IMG/VR virus record: IMGVR_UViG_3300045970_000794
Location: 62,001 to 126,000 of that record
Length of the DNA stretch: 64,000 nucleotides
Strand: one strand, 5' to 3'
The position numbers were made by a program, and so were the translations under genes. Positions within the stretch are counted from its first letter, which is position 1, and each line of letters begins with the position of its first letter. Below the pieces are notes generated by a model. The model ran no database searches. It saw only the letters and a list, made by a program, of their open reading frames with translations, and was not told the origin of the DNA. Positions 6,721 to 19,364 of the stretch are shown here, one piece after another.

Positions 6721-6810
6721 CTATCCATTTAGGCATACCCTGACCGTCTCAATACGACTATTACGTCTCATCGAGTTAATCCAATTCATATGTATGCTAA
6801 TGTTTTTCAT
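6721..6810 (-). CDS. 29-aa leader peptide MKNISIHMNWINSMRRNSRIETVRVCLNG
   Basis: Manual translation; lies between promoter and terminator; contains a putative antiterminator strand GGTCAGGGT. Confidence 0.75.
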   Translation of the reverse strand: MKNISIHMNWINSMRRNSRIETVRVCLNG

Positions 6811-6862
6811 AATAAAATTTCTTTTACAATTAATAAATATGTGTTACTTTTAAATTATACTA

Positions 6863-6912
6863 CAAATTTACAAACTATTTTATTAAAAAGCAAGTTTTTT
6901 GCAATTATTTTT
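6863..6912 (-). promoter_or_regulatory. Bacteroidota sigma70-type promoter of tRNA operon 1
   Basis: TTGC...TAAATTTG; near-identical 50-bp copy at 15925-15976. Confidence 0.75.
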
Positions 6913-6942
6913 CATTTATTTTTTAAGTTACTGATTATTAGG

Positions 6943-7494
6943 TTATTGTTTTTTATAAATTCCAACAAATTTACCCGCTTGGAAGAATTCAAACCCATTA
7001 GGTATATTCTTTTTAAAAAGGTAACTATATAAATCCATTCTTCGATTACTTGATGGGGTTTCACCTTTACGAGAATTATATGTTGGCTCAGCGAAAATCA
7101 TTTGAAGTGGTATATCAGCATCATTTAATTTACCAAGAGCACTAGCGATAATACTCTTAACTGTATTCATAATCATAATTACGTCACCTTTATTTGACGT
7201 ATCAGCGAATAAACCTTCATCTTCTCTAAAACTAACATCTAAATAAGCACCATTTTCATCATGATTTAAATTAAGTTTTTTAAGTAATTCCATAAGTAAA
7301 TCTATTGATACTATGTCATTAGCAATTATAACTTCAATCTTATATTCACCATGTTTTTCATTTGGTACTCTGAATTTGTATAAGAAATTAATTAAATTAC
7401 CACGAATTACATTAACTGTTTGTATGAACGGTAAACCATCACCTTCACCAAACTCTTTTAATAATGCTTCCCTTAATTTAAGTTGTATATTCAT
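6943..7494 (-). CDS. hypothetical protein
   Basis: 183-aa ORF preceded by TATTTATA motif. Confidence 0.65.
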   Translation of the reverse strand: MNIQLKLREALLKEFGEGDGLPFIQTVNVIRGNLINFLYKFRVPNEKHGEYKIEVIIANDIVSIDLLMELLKKLNLNHDENGAYLDVSFREDEGLFADTSNKGDVIMIMNTVKSIIASALGKLNDADIPLQMIFAEPTYNSRKGETPSSNRRMDLYSYLFKKNIPNGFEFFQAGKFVGIYKKQ

Positions 7495-7506
7495 AAAATA
7501 ATTTTA

Positions 7507-8670
7507 TTATAAATATCTGGTGAACTTATCAAATTCAGCATGTTCGATTGCTCTACCCATGTCTGGACCTGGTTTTATTCCTTTATCTAACATTTCATCA
7601 CCAGTAACTGATAATTTAAACTGAACAAACGCCTCAATCATTTTCATATCCAATGCATTTAATTCAGCAAATCTTATTAACTCATTAGGCTCGATTTTAG
7701 AGACTATCTCAGCTTTTTTGTATCTGAATACCAATTCTGGTTTAAAGTTAAGCATACGCAATAAAAAGACTATTTTAGATACCTCTATCCAACTATATGT
7801 TAAAGCGTTTAATGCCTTTTGAACTTCTTCTAGATTATTTTTAATTAATAGTCCAGCAATTAATACAATTGGGTCCTTTTCTTCAATAACACCAGCCATA
7901 TTAACATTTAATTTACCAAATATCCATTTAAGTAAATCATATTGTCTGTACATACCAAATAAATGAGTAATTGATTTTGCTGATTTAAATGATTTCAAAA
8001 ATTCATCCCTAATTCTCTCTGGTGAAATACCTTCCAAGCTAGAATCATTTCTTAATGCCATATCAGTAGCTTCATCAAGATTAGAACCAAATCTAGCTGC
8101 GAAACGAATCGCTCTCATGATTCTAAGTCTATCTTCACCAAATCTATCCATTGGCTTACCTACAGTTCTAACAACTCCATTTTCAATATCTTTACGCCCT
8201 TTAACCAAATCAACGATTTCACCAGTTTTAAGGTCATAGAATAACGCATTAATAGTTAAGTCACGTCTTTTCACATCTTTATTTATGTTTGTGAAATTAA
8301 CTCCATCTGGCCTACGCCCAGAACCAACATCACTACGAAAAGTTGCAATCTCAAATTCATCATTAGCAGTAAACACATTAACAACACCAAAAGCTTTACC
8401 AGTTTCTAATATATTAGTAACAAATGGTTGTCCTTTAAGTGTAGCAATAACTTGGTCTGGTGTAGCATCAGTAGCAAGGTCAAAATCTTTAGGTTCTTTT
8501 CCTAATAACGCATCCCTAACTGAACCACCAACTAGGTAAAGGTCAAATCCTTTACTAGCCATAGCGTTTCTAATTAAAATGATGTCATTAGGTACTTGGA
8601 TGTGTGTTTTCTTCCTTTGTCCTAATAACCTTTGTTTTATTCTATTAAATACTGATTCTATAATTTCCAT
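7507..8670 (-). CDS. cca: CCA-adding enzyme / tRNA nucleotidyltransferase
   Basis: LVGGSVRD...KDFDLAT...RRDLTINALFYD...EDRLRIMRAIRFAARF; start MEII at 8670 lies just downstream of a TAnnTTTG promoter. Confidence 0.9.
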   Translation of the reverse strand: MEIIESVFNRIKQRLLGQRKKTHIQVPNDIILIRNAMASKGFDLYLVGGSVRDALLGKEPKDFDLATDATPDQVIATLKGQPFVTNILETGKAFGVVNVFTANDEFEIATFRSDVGSGRRPDGVNFTNINKDVKRRDLTINALFYDLKTGEIVDLVKGRKDIENGVVRTVGKPMDRFGEDRLRIMRAIRFAARFGSNLDEATDMALRNDSSLEGISPERIRDEFLKSFKSAKSITHLFGMYRQYDLLKWIFGKLNVNMAGVIEEKDPIVLIAGLLIKNNLEEVQKALNALTYSWIEVSKIVFLLRMLNFKPELVFRYKKAEIVSKIEPNELIRFAELNALDMKMIEAFVQFKLSVTGDEMLDKGIKPGPDMGRAIEHAEFDKFTRYL

Positions 8671-8713
8671 GATATTTTTTTTTGCAAAGATACTAATTAT
8701 AATATAAATATCC

Positions 8714-17036: not shown

Positions 17037-17038
17037 AA

Positions 17039-17878
17039 TTAATCAAATAAAATTTTACTAATAGGTTGAATAGCCTTTTTATGTTTAAATTTATACTTAT
17101 TATTCCCAAGTAATTGAATTATCTCAAGACCCAGATTGGAAGCTTTAACCGTATCCTCATAAACAACAAACTCAGTAGCACTATGCCAATCATAATATCC
17201 AGCAAACAAATTCATACAATTAAAATCAAAACTGCGTTTAATCGCAAATACATCGGTAAATGGGTCAGTATCTCGAATATTAGAAATACCATATCTTAAT
17301 AATATTGGGTCAACTAGTTTAAAGAACTCTCTATTAAATAGTTGCGTCCTATTTGAAACATATGATAACCAATCAGAACCTGGTGCATCAAATTCAATCG
17401 CATATCCAACACTATTGAATATATCAACATCAGCATTTCTGGAGCCAAGACAACCAATTTCTTCACCTTTAAAAAATGCACCAATAATATTATCAGTTTT
17501 ACTTATTATATCTAAACAAATTGCTATACCAGCTTTATCATCACCGCCAACACCAGTAATAGAATCTATACCTTGTTTTAATGGGTTCAGTGCCGTTAAA
17601 ATAGTTTTATTTTTATAAAATTTTTCATTGATTTTTAATTTTACATCTTTTTCAACCAGCTCACGATGCTCTTGAACGGTATCCATATGTGCAATCACAC
17701 ATGGGAAATACTCACCTTCACCAACTTTACCTTTTTTAAGATAAACATTACCATATGAATCAAGAATTACTGGTATAGAATTTTTAACTCCCCAAGAAAT
17801 TAAAAAATCAATCATCCGTTTTTCATAGTTATAAACGGTTGGAACTGCTAGTACTTCTTTCAATAATTCTATGTCCAT
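17039..17878 (-). CDS. M20/M28/M42-clan zinc peptidase-like protein
   Basis: AHMDTV...GGDDKAGI...EEIGCLGS...EFD...YYDWHSATE. Confidence 0.75.
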   Translation of the reverse strand: MDIELLKEVLAVPTVYNYEKRMIDFLISWGVKNSIPVILDSYGNVYLKKGKVGEGEYFPCVIAHMDTVQEHRELVEKDVKLKINEKFYKNKTILTALNPLKQGIDSITGVGGDDKAGIAICLDIISKTDNIIGAFFKGEEIGCLGSRNADVDIFNSVGYAIEFDAPGSDWLSYVSNRTQLFNREFFKLVDPILLRYGISNIRDTDPFTDVFAIKRSFDFNCMNLFAGYYDWHSATEFVVYEDTVKASNLGLEIIQLLGNNKYKFKHKKAIQPISKILFD

Positions 17879-17995
17879 AATTTAATTTTTATGCAAAGAT
17901 ATGTAAATTATATGTAAAAACCAAATATTAAAGTATTTATTTTAAAATAAAACTCATTATATTGAAATAATAACAATTATTAAAAAACATTAATT

Positions 17996-18145
17996 ATGTA
18001 TCTATTCGGATGTGGATGTGGTAAAAAGAGAGATAATGTAAGGACTAGACCACAGGTAACTAAACCTGTTCAAACCCCTACACCTCCACCAACTAATCCA
18101 CCTAAAACAAACCAATCAAACGGCTACCAAGGTCAAGGTAGTTAA
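17996..18145 (+). CDS. small protein with GCGCGKK motif and Pro/Thr-rich tail (49 aa)
   Basis: Manual translation MYLFGCGCGKKRDNVRTRPQVTKPVQTPTPPP...; followed by a terminator at 18148-18174. Confidence 0.6.
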   Translation: MYLFGCGCGKKRDNVRTRPQVTKPVQTPTPPPTNPPKTNQSNGYQGQGS

Positions 18146-18176
18146 AATAAAAAGCCAGATTACTCTGGCTTTTTCG

Positions 18177-18755
18177 TCAATAATTAATTGAACATTTGCG
18201 GTCTTCCCAATAATCATGTATTATTTTACAAAAATCAAGCATTTCTTGATGAGTCATATTATTTTTAGTATGATTAGCACTTATACTAATAAATTGAATA
18301 TTTCCTTTAATGTACCCTTTTTTAGAATCAATTCTGTCTAATGAAGCGGTATTATTATAATTGCAACCACATTCATTTTTTCGATTGGATTTATGTTTTA
18401 ATTCAACACCAGTATAAACACATAAACCTTTTTGTGAAGTCCACTGAGTTAATAAATCATCTAGGGTTATTGTACATTCAATATTTTTTTCTTTTTGTCT
18501 AATTTTTATACGTCTTAGATATTCTCTAAATTTAGTATATTCATCACATTTAATAATCTTTAAATTTTCATTGTGTTGACCATAGAAATTTTTTAATACT
18601 TCATAATAGGTTGCACTACAATTTAAAGAACAAAAATTTTTCCTACCAATTTTATTATTGCGTCTAACTTCAGAACCATCTTTCATAAATTTAGACCCAC
18701 ATTTTTCACAAATAACTTCAATTTGTGGTCGTTGATATTTCTTTTTATTTTCCAT
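18177..18755 (-). CDS. HNH-like endonuclease
   Basis: CEKC...CSLNC; CVYTG...ASLDRIDSKKGYIKGNIQFI...N..K. Confidence 0.8.
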   Translation of the reverse strand: MENKKKYQRPQIEVICEKCGSKFMKDGSEVRRNNKIGRKNFCSLNCSATYYEVLKNFYGQHNENLKIIKCDEYTKFREYLRRIKIRQKEKNIECTITLDDLLTQWTSQKGLCVYTGVELKHKSNRKNECGCNYNNTASLDRIDSKKGYIKGNIQFISISANHTKNNMTHQEMLDFCKIIHDYWEDRKCSINY

Positions 18756-18950
18756 AATAATAAATATCCCCACAATATAAAAACGCCCAGCTCCACGTGT
18801 CATAAAATAAAAAAAGTGCCATTGGCACTTTTCATATTAATATAAACCAAAATGTTAGTTTATCATAAAAGTAATAGTTTGTTAGTATTTAGTCGAATTT
18901 ATTCAATTCGTGTAGTGCATACCACGTACAGGTAACTAACCTAATGCACC

Positions 18951-19364
18951 TGGAGTTGGAGGGTAATGAACCCTCGTCTTACGAGCTCTTCAATAATATT
19001 CTACATGCTTAGGATTAAGTTTTCTTACTTACCAAAAATATTTAGTTGATTTATGTCACGGTTCAACTACTAAAACCGAGTGTTAATTAGACACCGACAC
19101 TACGGTGCTTTTTTTGTCATTCTTACTCTACTTACACTAAACTAAGTAAAGACTCAGCTTAATGTCATTGAGCAATGACCCGTCTGGCTTCAGTTAGGCA
19201 GCCATCGCCTCTCCAGCAAAAACACCACATGTGGCGTTTGCAAGGAAGTTTTCGTCAACAGATAATTCGTTGCCAGTTACTATTTTGATAGGTTTTTAAG
19301 TGTTTCCATCTAACACTGCATGCTAATTATTTACGACTACACGTAATCTAATCATTTCAACCCC
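18951..19364 (-). ncRNA. ssrA: tmRNA
   Basis: 5' GGGGTTG / 3' CAACTCC-A with G3:U70, T arm GAGGG-TTCATTA-CCCTC, tag ORF 19274-19194 ending AA*. Confidence 0.9.

What the first reader, a model, noticed from the sequence alone, without database searches (positions are those of the whole stretch)
6721..19364. Integrated translation-rescue circuit keyed to UAG and tRNA supply
The attenuated tRNA operon, amber tRNA, TAG-gated Pth, TAG-frameshifted RF, tmRNA, RNA ligase, CCA enzyme, HAD phosphatase, TROVE-like protein, bS21 and ClpP all lie within 26 kb. Three or four independent cis-signals use UAG. Inference: the phage monitors elongation (tRNA depletion) and termination (RF1 state), and deploys repair and rescue functions against host translation-poisoning defences.
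Basis: inference. Interest (0 to 1): 0.8.

Follow-up and report, generated by a model that had tools for sequence, protein, structure and literature searches.

The report
Amber-codon gates on phage translation genes
A giant phage carries its own amber-suppressor tRNA beside two translation genes whose synthesis depends on how the ribosome treats a UAG stop codon: a peptidyl-tRNA hydrolase with UAG as its third codon, and a shortened release factor 1 that needs a prfB-style +1 frameshift at CUU-UAG-C. Both signals are conserved in dozens of related phages.

Summary
Most listed parts are real: amber tRNA, PTH2 hydrolase, split RF1-like gene, tmRNA, CCA-adding enzyme, bS21, ClpP, a HAD (RNA-repair type) domain and a DUF2828 protein. 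No RNA ligase was found. The "attenuator" is an ordinary terminator-like hairpin, and the tmRNA tag ends in UAA.

Two UAG cis-signals have strong comparative support. (1) The RF1-like gene has no domain 1 and is joined by a +1 shift at CTT TAG C. Of 79 related phage loci, about 50 need a +1 shift at CTT-stop, about 28 carry in-frame TGA or TAG instead, and one is uninterrupted. The mode of passage switched repeatedly while the stop stayed in place. (2) PTH2 starts ATG-ACG-TAG. In 66 of 68 distinct phage loci the gene has ATG, then one to three codons, then TAG, usually with no later start codon. An amber tRNA usually lies within 1.5 kb.

The window is not TAG-recoded: 8 of 63 ORFs end in TAG. 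My reading is a UAG-decoding control module. PTH2 reports amber suppression. The RF reports unfilled UAG decoding, as prfB does for UGA. The anti-defence "integrated circuit" reading remains untested. The papers searched state that frameshift or readthrough control of RF1 genes is unknown.

The parts
9732..9807 (-). Amber-suppressor tRNA (anticodon CUA, discriminator U). No encoded CCA. Amino-acid identity unknown.
   Evidence: ARAGORN; Rfam tRNA 51.2 bits. Syntenic in relatives, directly upstream of PTH2.
9821..9828 (-). TAnnTTTG promoter-like motif (TATCTTTG) 14 nt upstream of the amber tRNA.
   Evidence: Sequence. The motif is enriched upstream of genes, 13/59 against a 6% background.
9682..9690 (-). 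ATG ACG TAG: start codon and in-frame UAG (codon 3) of the PTH2 reading frame.
   Evidence: The same ATG + 1-3 codons + TAG occurs in 66 of 68 distinct phage PTH2 loci.
9337..9681 (-). PTH2-type peptidyl-tRNA hydrolase body. The window also has an internal ATG at 9669, which most relatives lack.
   Evidence: Pfam PF01981, 40.6 bits against a cut-off of 23; NCBIfam Pth2; relatives.
13046..13201 (-). RF1-like factor, 0-frame N piece (52 codons, starts just before the EIRAAEGG helix). No domain 1.
   Evidence: Pfam PCRF profile positions 102-146; NCBIfam RF1 profile 106-150; translation.
13042..13048 (-). +1 frameshift site CTT TAG C (Leu in the P site, UAG in the A site, reading resumes at AGC).
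   Evidence: CTT-stop is invariant in about 50 related loci.
12526..13044 (-). RF1-like factor, +1-frame C piece with the SPT (PxT position) and GGQ motifs.
   Evidence: NCBIfam RF1 158.9 bits, above RF2 100.6 and PrfH 77.1. PDB RF1 121 bits against RF2 about 72. Motifs.
18950..19364 (-). tmRNA. Tag ends ...AGEAMAA followed by TAA at 19196-19194.
   Evidence: Rfam RF00023, 72.6 bits; tag frame; syntenic in relatives.
19413..20078 (-). ClpP protease subunit, immediately upstream of the tmRNA.
   Evidence: Pfam CLP_protease 174 bits; conserved synteny in 29 loci.
7507..8715 (-). CCA-adding tRNA nucleotidyltransferase.
   Evidence: Pfam PolyA_pol 124.8 bits; NCBIfam CCA enzyme 192.8 bits. Only 1 of 13 tRNA genes encodes CCA.
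16244..16429 (-). Ribosomal protein bS21. Not part of the conserved block in relatives.
   Evidence: Pfam 47.4 bits; 0 hits in related loci.
6661..6688 (-). Terminator-like hairpin between orf183 and the tRNA array.
   Evidence: No leader or riboswitch was found.
3129..6648 (-). tRNA array (Arg x2, Asn x2, Ile, His x2, Trp x2 and one weak match) interspersed with homing-endonuclease-like ORFs.
14348..15051 (-). Second tRNA cluster (Met, Glu, an odd 94-nt tRNA, two weak tRNA-like elements).
8720..8745 (-). Terminator-like hairpin closing the putative tRNA(CUA)-PTH2-orf149 unit.
20881..21912 (-). DnaJ-type co-chaperone, part of the conserved block.
   Evidence: synteny.
21902..22387 (-). HAD domain of the 'Swiss Army Knife' RNA-repair type. 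Not conserved at this place in relatives.
   Evidence: Pfam PF18143, 76.7 bits; 0 hits in loci.
23915..26284 (-).
   Evidence: The gene is contiguous in relatives.

Best explanation
The core of the finding is a UAG-decoding control module carried by a clade of low-GC jumbo phages. Their host probably has Bacteroidota-type expression signals. The module has three parts.

1. A phage amber-suppressor tRNA.

2. A PTH2 peptidyl-tRNA hydrolase, probably co-transcribed just downstream of the tRNA. Its reading frame opens ATG-x-UAG, so full-length protein is made only when UAG is read as sense. This works as a cheap early checkpoint: a coherent feed-forward gate that reports the ratio of suppressor to RF1.

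3. A domain-1-less RF1-like release factor whose mRNA needs a +1 slip of peptidyl-tRNA-Leu from CUU to UUU while UAG sits unread in the A site. This is the prfB mechanism transposed to UAG. Termination by RF1-type activity gives only a 52-residue peptide. Amber suppression in the 0 frame gives a dead-end product. The factor is therefore made mainly when UAG decoding capacity is low.

Shown here: the sequences, their frames, their family-wide conservation and the synteny. Inferred: that frameshifting and readthrough actually occur, that the RF reads UAG, and which way each regulation runs.

The neighbouring tmRNA, ClpP, DnaJ, CCA-adding enzyme, bS21 and RNA-repair-type genes are the usual translation and proteostasis cargo of jumbo phages. 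Some are in conserved synteny. Nothing shows that they are wired to UAG.
For: RF1-like gene:
- The N piece in frame 0 ends ...TGC CTT TAG C, and homology continues without a gap in frame +1.
- No start codon exists in the +1 frame before the PxT-bearing segment, so that segment can only be translated through the shift.
- It is RF1-like by NCBIfam (159 bits against 101 for RF2) and by PDB (121 against 72). It has SPT at the PxT position, Q at the RF1 third-base position, and GGQ.
- Of 79 viral loci, about 50 have CTT-TAG, CTT-TGA or CTT-TAA +1 sites at 32, 42, 46 or 48 codons after the EIRAAEGG motif. About 28 have in-frame TGA or TAG at the same places. Only one is uninterrupted.
- About 27 of 31 sites in the high-GC branch carry a GGAGG-like element ending 6 nt 5' of the stop, the prfB geometry (spacing rule from PMC10732093).
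- The gating mode changes at least 5-6 times on well-supported branches while the stop position persists.
- In relatives, TGA-as-Trp is confined to the RF gene: about 23 TGA against 12 TGG there, and 0 TGA against 166 TGG in neighbouring conserved genes.

PTH2:
- 66 of 68 distinct loci (58 unique genes) have ATG + 1-3 codons + TAG. Each has exactly one TAG, and the next base is a purine in 56 of 58.
- No canonical start lies between the TAG and the domain.
- An SD sequence sits 9 nt before the upstream ATG in LR756501.
- A tRNA-CUA lies within 1.5 kb in 44 of 66 loci, and directly upstream in the window's clade.
- The same pairing occurs in the cultured mycobacteriophages Alice, Cane17 and Myrna.

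Window:
- It is not recoded. Stop usage is 51 TAA, 8 TAG, 4 TGA, and no other gene is interrupted by TAG.
Against: - There are no expression data, so frameshifting and readthrough are inferred.
- The window's PTH2 has an internal ATG at 9669 that could bypass the gate.
- In mycobacteriophages the SD spacing favours a GTG just after the TAG, so there the TAG may act as a start-stop element rather than a sense codon.
- Most distant RF relatives use UGA at the shift site although the protein looks RF1-like. Strict autoregulation therefore cannot hold for them. The signal may sense host termination capacity in general.
- The window's site has no SD-like stimulator.
- Only 64 kb of a 362-kb genome was seen. 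TAG-containing late genes elsewhere are not excluded.
- The amino acid carried by the tRNA is unknown.
Confidence: 0.6

Rival explanations
1. All eleven elements form one integrated rescue circuit that senses tRNA depletion and RF1 state, and deploys repair functions against host translation-poisoning defences.
For: - The parts are co-located and co-oriented.
- A block DUF2828-orf176-DnaJ-metallopeptidase-ClpP-tmRNA-tRNAMet-RF-kinase-like-tRNA(CUA)-PTH2-...-CCA enzyme is syntenic in about 28 loci.
- HAD_SAK_2 and DUF2828 are families named for RNA-repair contexts.
- Only 1 of 13 tRNA genes encodes CCA, so the CCA enzyme serves the phage tRNAs.
Against: - Several terminator-like hairpins split the region into separate units.
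- No attenuator, T-box or leader was found, and no RNA ligase.
- The tmRNA uses UAA.
- bS21, CoaE and HAD are not in the conserved block.
- The synteny comes from one clade, so it counts as one observation.
- Distant phages have the gated RF without the rest.
- Nothing links any part to a defence system.
Confidence: 0.12
2. Ordinary stop-codon recoding. The phage switches the cell to a TAG-sense code late in infection, as in Lak or crAss-like phages. The tRNA(CUA) is the recoder, and PTH2 is simply one recoded gene.
For: - A suppressor tRNA plus a release factor resembles the 'code-change module' of Borges et al..
- 300 kb of the genome was not inspected.
Against: - 8 of 63 long ORFs in the window end in TAG, and none except the RF is interrupted by it. 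This includes two amidases and six ORFs of 600-1070 codons.
- In 58 unique PTH2 genes the TAG is always at codons 2-5 and never elsewhere. That is positional gating, not scattered recoding.
- In the RF, reading TAG as sense gives a non-homologous dead end.
- TAG-recoded phages are reported to carry RF2, not RF1.
Confidence: 0.1
3. The ATG-x-TAG before PTH2 is a minimal upstream ORF (start-stop type). PTH2 itself is translated by re-initiation at the next codon, independently of the suppressor tRNA.
For: - In mycobacteriophages the arrangement is (A/G)TG TAG GTG, with the SD best placed for the GTG.
- The codon after TAG is AUU, AUA or AUC in 39 of 58 genes. These are near-cognate starts.
- The window has an ATG four codons later.
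Against: - 19 of 58 genes have GUU, GUA, AGC, AAC, CUU, UGG or GGC after the TAG.
- The SD in LR756501 is placed for the upstream ATG.
- This model leaves the tight linkage with a tRNA(CUA) gene across very different phages unexplained.
- A purine after UAG is the classical good context for amber suppression (own knowledge).
Confidence: 0.15
4. Artefact or decay. The RF is a frameshifted pseudogene or an assembly error, and the TAG before PTH2 is chance.
For: - A nearby kinase-like gene (orf82/orf95) really is broken by a 7-nt tandem duplication.
- The region is full of homing endonucleases.
Against: - The identical CTT-stop motif, with both frames conserved at the protein level, occurs in about 50 independent contigs.
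- TAG is present in 66 of 68 PTH2 loci.
- The stop identity varies (TAG, TGA, TAA) while CTT is invariant.
Confidence: 0.02

Closest known systems
prfB (RF2) autoregulatory +1 programmed frameshift, CUU UGA C
   Same: - CUU-U slippery codon followed by a stop and a C.
- The stop is of the type the product should read.
- The truncated 0-frame product is short.
- Relatives in high-GC phages have a GGAGG-like element ending 6 nt 5' of the stop (PMC10732093).
   Different: - The gene is RF1-like, not RF2.
- The stop is UAG. The literature searched says TAG is never seen in the prfB motif and that prfA is not frameshift-regulated (PMC12421855; PMC10885494; PMC5009743).
- The site lies in domain 2 (codon 53), not at codon 26 of domain 1.
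- There is no SD stimulator in the window.
- Within the family the same checkpoint is alternatively passed by UGA or UAG readthrough.
Code-change modules of stop-codon-recoded phages (Borges et al., bioRxiv 10.1101/2021.08.26.457843)
   Same: Phage-encoded suppressor tRNA and release factor placed together. In-frame stop codons are proposed to time gene expression.
   Different: - Those modules are themselves written in standard code and serve genome-wide recoding of late genes.
- Here the window is standard-coded and uses TAG as a terminator.
- The stops sit at fixed positions in the translation-factor genes themselves.
PrfH and ArfB (short GGQ rescue factors)
   Same: No N-terminal domain 1. 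Small size, about 224 residues. Located among rescue genes.
   Different: - It keeps the PxT-position tripeptide and the RF1 decoding residues.
- It scores far better on RF1 than on PrfH or ArfB models.
- There is no RtcB partner.
Synthetic suppressor-tRNA feed-forward loop (PMC7969014)
   Same: A suppressor tRNA is expressed together with a target gene that carries early amber codons, so output needs both transcription and suppression (abstract).
   Different: That one is an engineered E. coli device. Here the arrangement is natural, conserved and attached to one gene family (PTH2).
tRNA/tmRNA/Pth sets of cluster C mycobacteriophages (Bixzunavirus, Myrnavirus)
   Same: A PTH2-type 'peptidyl tRNA hydrolase' lies inside a tRNA array with an annotated suppressor tRNA(cta) 130-250 nt away, and a TAG immediately precedes the annotated start.
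   Different: The start there is probably the GTG after the TAG. The hosts are high-GC and use SD sequences. No gated RF was seen next to the gene.
Giant-virus release factor needing readthrough and frameshift (cited in PMC5009743; PMC3521657)
   Same: A viral release-factor gene whose expression needs recoding at stop codons.
   Different: That one is a eukaryote-type factor in an amoeba virus. It is unrelated in sequence and signals. I did not read the paper in detail.

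Membership tests
Class I release factor RF1 (prfA) | PCRF and RF-1 domains with the GGQ motif | tested here: met
   Pfam PCRF 32.9 bits on the N piece and RF-1 85.2 bits on the C piece. GGQ is present.
Class I release factor RF1 (prfA) | PxT tripeptide and RF1-type third-base reader (Q before it, T in HTS) | tested here: inconclusive
   The window has QRV-SPT-E...HTS. Most relatives have PPT. It aligns to PAT of E. coli RF1. Ser at the first position is the RF2 residue, so specificity cannot be read off the sequence.
Class I release factor RF1 (prfA) | N-terminal domain 1 (about 105 residues) and a full-length equivalog score | tested here: not met
   The ORF starts 4 residues before EIRAAEGG, and the whole family is about 225 residues. 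NCBIfam gives 158.9 and 30.3 bits against a cut-off of 400.
prfB-type programmed +1 frameshift | CUU U-stop shift site with both frames conserved | tested here: met
   CTT TAG C at 13048-13042. CTT is invariant in about 50 loci.
prfB-type programmed +1 frameshift | Internal SD-like stimulator ending 6 nt 5' of the stop | tested here: not met
   Absent in the window and its low-GC clade. Present in about 27 of 31 high-GC relatives. Only 2 of 59 genes in the window have SD-like motifs.
prfB-type programmed +1 frameshift | Frameshift efficiency falls as the cognate RF rises (autoregulation) | not testable with these tools
   This needs reporter or in vitro translation assays.
PrfH (RF-H) | TIGR03072 equivalog score, loss of the stop-codon-reading motif, RtcB partner | tested here: not met
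   77.1 bits against a cut-off of 166.65; PDB PrfH 35-41 bits; SPT motif kept; no RtcB found.
PTH2 peptidyl-tRNA hydrolase | Pfam PF01981 above the gathering score | tested here: met
   40.6 bits against 23. The NCBIfam Pth2 equivalogs are below their cut-offs, 29 against 126, so this is a divergent member.
Stop-codon-recoded phage (TAG sense, code 15 type) | In-frame TAG in many genes and TAG avoided as a terminator | tested here: not met
   8 of 63 ORFs end in TAG, and the only TAG-interrupted gene is the RF. Only 64 of 362 kb was seen.
tmRNA | Rfam RF00023 above the gathering score, with a tag reading frame | tested here: met
   72.6 bits against 47. The tag ...AGEAMAA-TAA resembles those of relatives.
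Transcription attenuator or T-box upstream of the tRNA operon | Leader element with alternative structures, or a known riboswitch model | tested here: not met
   No Rfam family matched. There is only a simple hairpin followed by a T-run at 6688-6661.
TROVE/Ro60 family | Match to the TROVE domain | tested here: not met
   Only DUF2828 and DUF7788 were hit, even at E<=1. A relation between DUF2828 and TROVE/vWA proteins is recalled from memory only.

The most novel reading that the evidence does not exclude
The amber tRNA, the UAG-gated PTH2 and the UAG-frameshifted RF1-like factor form a natural two-output switch on a single codon.

Early in infection UAG is scarcely decoded. The RF mRNA frameshifts and RF1-type activity is topped up. 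As the phage tRNA(CUA) accumulates, it reads the UAG in the RF mRNA in frame, which shuts off RF synthesis, and it opens the PTH2 gate. That gives positive feedback, flipping the infected cell into an amber-readthrough state.

More widely, a whole family of phage RF1-like genes would be the long-sought RF1 counterpart of prfB control. It uses frameshift, UGA readthrough or UAG readthrough interchangeably at one checkpoint.
Probability: 0.25. Interest if true: 0.9.

Novelty: new variant of a known kind. Interest (0 to 1): 0.8.

Why it matters
Programmed +1 frameshifting at CUU-stop is the textbook example of translational autoregulation. So far it is tied to one gene, prfB, and one codon, UGA. 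Recent surveys and reviews state that no RF1 counterpart, and no UAG version, is known (PMC12421855, PMC5009743, PMC10885494).

A large family of phage RF1-like genes is almost always interrupted by a stop. The way past that stop has switched repeatedly between frameshift and readthrough. This would be an independent natural experiment on how termination capacity is sensed.

The PTH2 gate shows a suppressor tRNA used as a private regulatory channel rather than for genome-wide recoding. It has been found in uncultured jumbo phages and in cultured mycobacteriophages, so it can be tested at the bench now. It also warns annotators: these genes are routinely called as fragments or with wrong starts.

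Tried and rejected
- Megablast of the region against GenBank phages gave no match.
- A single-protein scan of viral contigs found only the source contig. An alignment-based scan was needed.
- Genome-wide recoding of the window was rejected from ORF statistics and stop usage.
- A crude code-4 versus code-11 coverage comparison on the loci was uninformative at high GC. It was replaced by counting stops inside conserved neighbouring genes.
- The RF tripeptide does not correlate with the stop codon at the shift site. All members are PPT or SPT whatever the stop. A simple "stop matches specificity" rule was therefore dropped.
- Other ATG-x-TAG starts in the window (RNase HII at 29094, SbcC-like at 46001, orf98 at 46287, 62862) are probably chance. 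A promoter-like motif or a proper ATG follows them. No other gene family in the loci shares the gate.
- The identity of the amber tRNA could not be determined. The nearest tRNAs differ from locus to locus.
- The RNA ligase search was negative by profile searches and by KxDG motif.
- A literature search on DUF2828 and TROVE was useless because "trove" is a common English word.
- Structure prediction, the representative-protein search and the protein atlas were not used. Sequence evidence was sufficient.

Full report
**Source and setting.** The window is part of IMGVR_UViG_3300045970_000794, a 362-kb viral contig. It has 30% GC, and nearly all genes are on the minus strand. SD-like motifs precede only 2 of 59 genes. 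Upstream regions are A-rich, and the motif TAnnTTTG is enriched before genes, 13 of 59 against a 6% background. From my own knowledge, this is the expression style of Bacteroidota. No close relative exists among GenBank phages.

**Checking the list.**

Confirmed:
- tRNA(CUA) at 9732-9807.
- PTH2 at 9337-9669.
- CCA-adding enzyme at 7507-8715.
- RF pieces at 12526-13044 and 13046-13201.
- bS21 at 16244-16429, CoaE, and ClpP at 19413-20078.
- tmRNA at 18950-19364.
- DnaJ, and HAD_SAK_2 at 21902-22387.
- A DUF2828/DUF7788 protein split by a GIY-YIG gene.

Not confirmed:
- No RNA ligase was found in any ORF tested.
- The "attenuator" is a plain hairpin followed by a T-run at 6688-6661, 13 nt before the first tRNA. 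Similar hairpins at 8745, 14026, 18174 and 18833 cut the region into several units.
- No riboswitch or T-box was detected.
- The tmRNA tag ends ...AGEAMAA and stops at TAA.

Only 1 of 13 tRNA genes encodes CCA, which gives the CCA enzyme an obvious job.

**The release factor.** Frame 0 starts at 13201 and reads 52 codons from just before the EIRAAEGG helix to ...TGC CTT TAG. Homology to RF1 then continues without a gap in the +1 frame from AGC at 13044. It runs through QRV-SPT-E..HTS and GGQ to the stop at 12526. The +1 frame has no start codon before the decoding motif, so that segment can only be made by shifting. Reading the TAG as sense gives 27 unrelated residues and another TAG.

The protein is RF1-like:
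- NCBIfam: RF1 159 bits, RF2 101, PrfH 77.
- PDB: RF1 121 bits, RF2 about 72, PrfH about 40.

It lacks domain 1, as does the whole family of about 225 residues.

**The RF family.** A search found 1,273 homologues in two length classes. An alignment-based scan fetched 79 viral loci. Reading the DNA gave these classes:
- About 50 loci need a +1 shift at an invariant CTT followed by a stop, at 32, 42, 46 or 48 codons after the EIRAAEGG motif. The stop is TAG in the window's low-GC clade. It is mostly TGA, sometimes TAG or TAA, in a GC-rich clade.
- About 27 of 31 GC-rich sites have a GGAGG-like element ending 6 nt before the stop. This is exactly the prfB geometry (PMC10732093).
- About 28 loci have no shift but carry in-frame TGA at tryptophan positions, or TAG (L030, L031, L033, L045), at the same places.
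- Only L071 is uninterrupted.

In the low-GC relatives, TGA-as-Trp is confined to the RF gene. There are about 23 TGA against 12 TGG in the RF, and 0 TGA against 166 TGG in neighbouring conserved genes.

On a maximum-likelihood tree the mode of passage changes at least five or six times on well-supported branches, while the checkpoint position persists. Examples: L012 (readthrough) is sister to L025 (frameshift), L070 against L073 at codon 42, and L045/L046 sit inside a frameshift clade. This excludes error or decay and argues for selection on a stop-codon checkpoint as such.

All members carry PPT or SPT whatever the stop. Strict self-recognition can therefore hold for the UAG and UAA sites but not for the UGA sites.

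**PTH2.** In the window the frame opens ATG ACG TAG ATT AAC AGA AAA ATG.... In 18 relatives from the RF loci the same ATG-x-TAG is present, but no later ATG exists.

A scan with a PTH2 alignment fetched 80 loci with GC from 23% to 53%:
- 66 of 68 distinct loci have ATG, one to three codons, then TAG, then 2-8 codons and the conserved domain.
- None has a canonical start between the TAG and the domain.
- In 58 unique genes there is exactly one TAG. The ORF then runs about 113 codons to TAA (43), TGA (13) or TAG (1).
- The base after the TAG is a purine in 56 of 58. From my own knowledge, that is the classical favourable context for amber suppression.

In LR756501 an AAGGAG lies 9 nt before the ATG that precedes the TAG, so initiation there is upstream of the TAG.

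A tRNA(CUA) is found within 1.5 kb in 44 of 66 loci, and more at lower thresholds. In the window's clade it lies 45-200 nt upstream in the same orientation. It is rare in the RF loci that lack PTH2.

The pairing extends to cultured mycobacteriophages. Alice, Cane17 and Myrna have (A/G)TG TAG GTG at the start of their annotated peptidyl tRNA hydrolase and a tRNA(cta) 130-250 nt downstream. There the SD spacing favours the GTG after the TAG, so a start-stop role is possible.

No other gene family in the loci shows this gate. The other ATG-x-TAG cases in the window look fortuitous.

**Not recoded.** In the window 51 long ORFs end in TAA, 8 in TAG and 4 in TGA. None but the RF is interrupted by TAG, including two amidases and six very long ORFs.

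**Synteny.** About 28 loci of one clade share this order: DUF2828 - orf176 - DnaJ - metallopeptidase - ClpP - tmRNA - tRNA-Met x2 - RF - kinase-like gene - tRNA(CUA) - PTH2 - tRNA-Cys ... CCA enzyme. bS21, CoaE and the HAD gene are not part of it. Distant phages have the gated RF alone.

**Interpretation.** The well-supported core is a UAG-decoding module.
- PTH2 output should rise with the ratio of suppressor to RF1. The early position of the stop makes failure cheap. Co-transcription with the tRNA makes a coherent feed-forward loop like the synthetic device of PMC7969014.
- RF output should rise when UAG is left unread. It should fall with RF1 activity, as in prfB, and also with the suppressor, which reads the site in frame.
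- Together these could hold UAG decoding at a set point or flip it during infection.

These directions are inferences from the prfB precedent and from codon geometry, not measurements.

**Known or new.** Papers searched state the following:
- Frameshift control is known for prfB and not for prfA, and TAG is not seen in the prfB motif (PMC12421855).
- An in-frame UAG in RF1 genes is unknown (PMC5009743).
- All CUU-stop +1 sites in RECODE are prfB (PMC10885494).
- Huge-phage and recoded-phage papers list phage RFs, tmRNAs and suppressor tRNAs without these signals.

I found no description of the PTH2 gate. The library is limited to open papers, so prior description elsewhere cannot be excluded.

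Noticed in passing
window 10142-10667 (-), junction at 10417-10436: orf82 and orf95 are two halves of one P-loop kinase-like gene that is contiguous and in one frame in relatives. Here they are split by a 7-nt tandem duplication (ATTTGTG ATTTGTG). This is either a fresh pseudogene or an assembly slip.
   Followed up: partly
window 23915-26284: The DUF2828/DUF7788 gene is cut in two by about 0.8 kb carrying a SegE-like GIY-YIG endonuclease gene on the opposite strand (24997-25809). Relatives have an uninterrupted gene.
   Followed up: partly
L004, L006-L012, L014, L016-L020, L022-L024 and others (RF genes near position 9830-10500): Close relatives have no frameshift but carry two in-frame TGA codons at tryptophan positions of the RF gene. 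About 1,900 codons of neighbouring conserved genes contain none. This looks like gene-specific UGA readthrough rather than code 4.
   Followed up: yes
L030, L031, L033 (codon 46) and L045 (codon 32) of the RF gene: An in-frame TAG, with no shift, replaces the TGA or the frameshift site. This is an RF1-like gene needing UAG readthrough, the case that a 2016 review called unknown.
   Followed up: partly
L161 (Myrna), L162 (Alice), L164 (Cane17): Cultured cluster C mycobacteriophages have (A/G)TG TAG GTG at the start of their Pth gene and a tRNA(cta) 130-250 nt downstream. In Myrna that tRNA is annotated as tRNA-Ser.
   Followed up: partly
window 15052-15975 (-): About 0.9 kb has no ORF but GC-rich, tRNA-like pieces. 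No Rfam family matches. A TAnnTTTG motif sits at 15932.
   Followed up: partly
window 3811-3897, 6354-6529, 14958-15051: Several tRNAs have odd lengths: Asn 87 nt, Trp 80 and 91 nt, and a 94-nt tRNA called Tyr(ata) with a 31-nt insertion in the D region. They may be interrupted or decaying copies.
   Followed up: no
window 2401-3069, 5053-5793, 10648-11424, 13185-13937, 18177-18803, 24997-25809: The tRNA and translation region holds an unusual density of homing-endonuclease genes (HNH, GIY-YIG, NUMOD). One HNH gene overlaps the RF start by 17 nt.
   Followed up: no
window, all genes: SD-like motifs precede only 2 of 59 genes. Upstream regions are A-rich and TAnnTTTG is enriched. This points to a Bacteroidota-type host and fits the phage bS21 gene.
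   Followed up: partly
L023 11812 and 12617: One relative has two PTH2 paralogues side by side, each with the N-terminal TAG, and two tRNA(CUA) genes.
   Followed up: no
window 41388-42227, 32664-33281, 39132-39788, 34717-37290: Other cargo: a sigma-70 family factor, two cell-wall amidases, and an 857-residue protein with ArdC-like and metallopeptidase domains.
   Followed up: no
window 29076 and 45995: TAG ATT also follows a short ATG-led frame just upstream of the RNase HII and SbcC-like genes. In both cases a proper ATG, and for RNase HII a promoter-like motif, lies downstream, so these are probably chance.
   Followed up: partly
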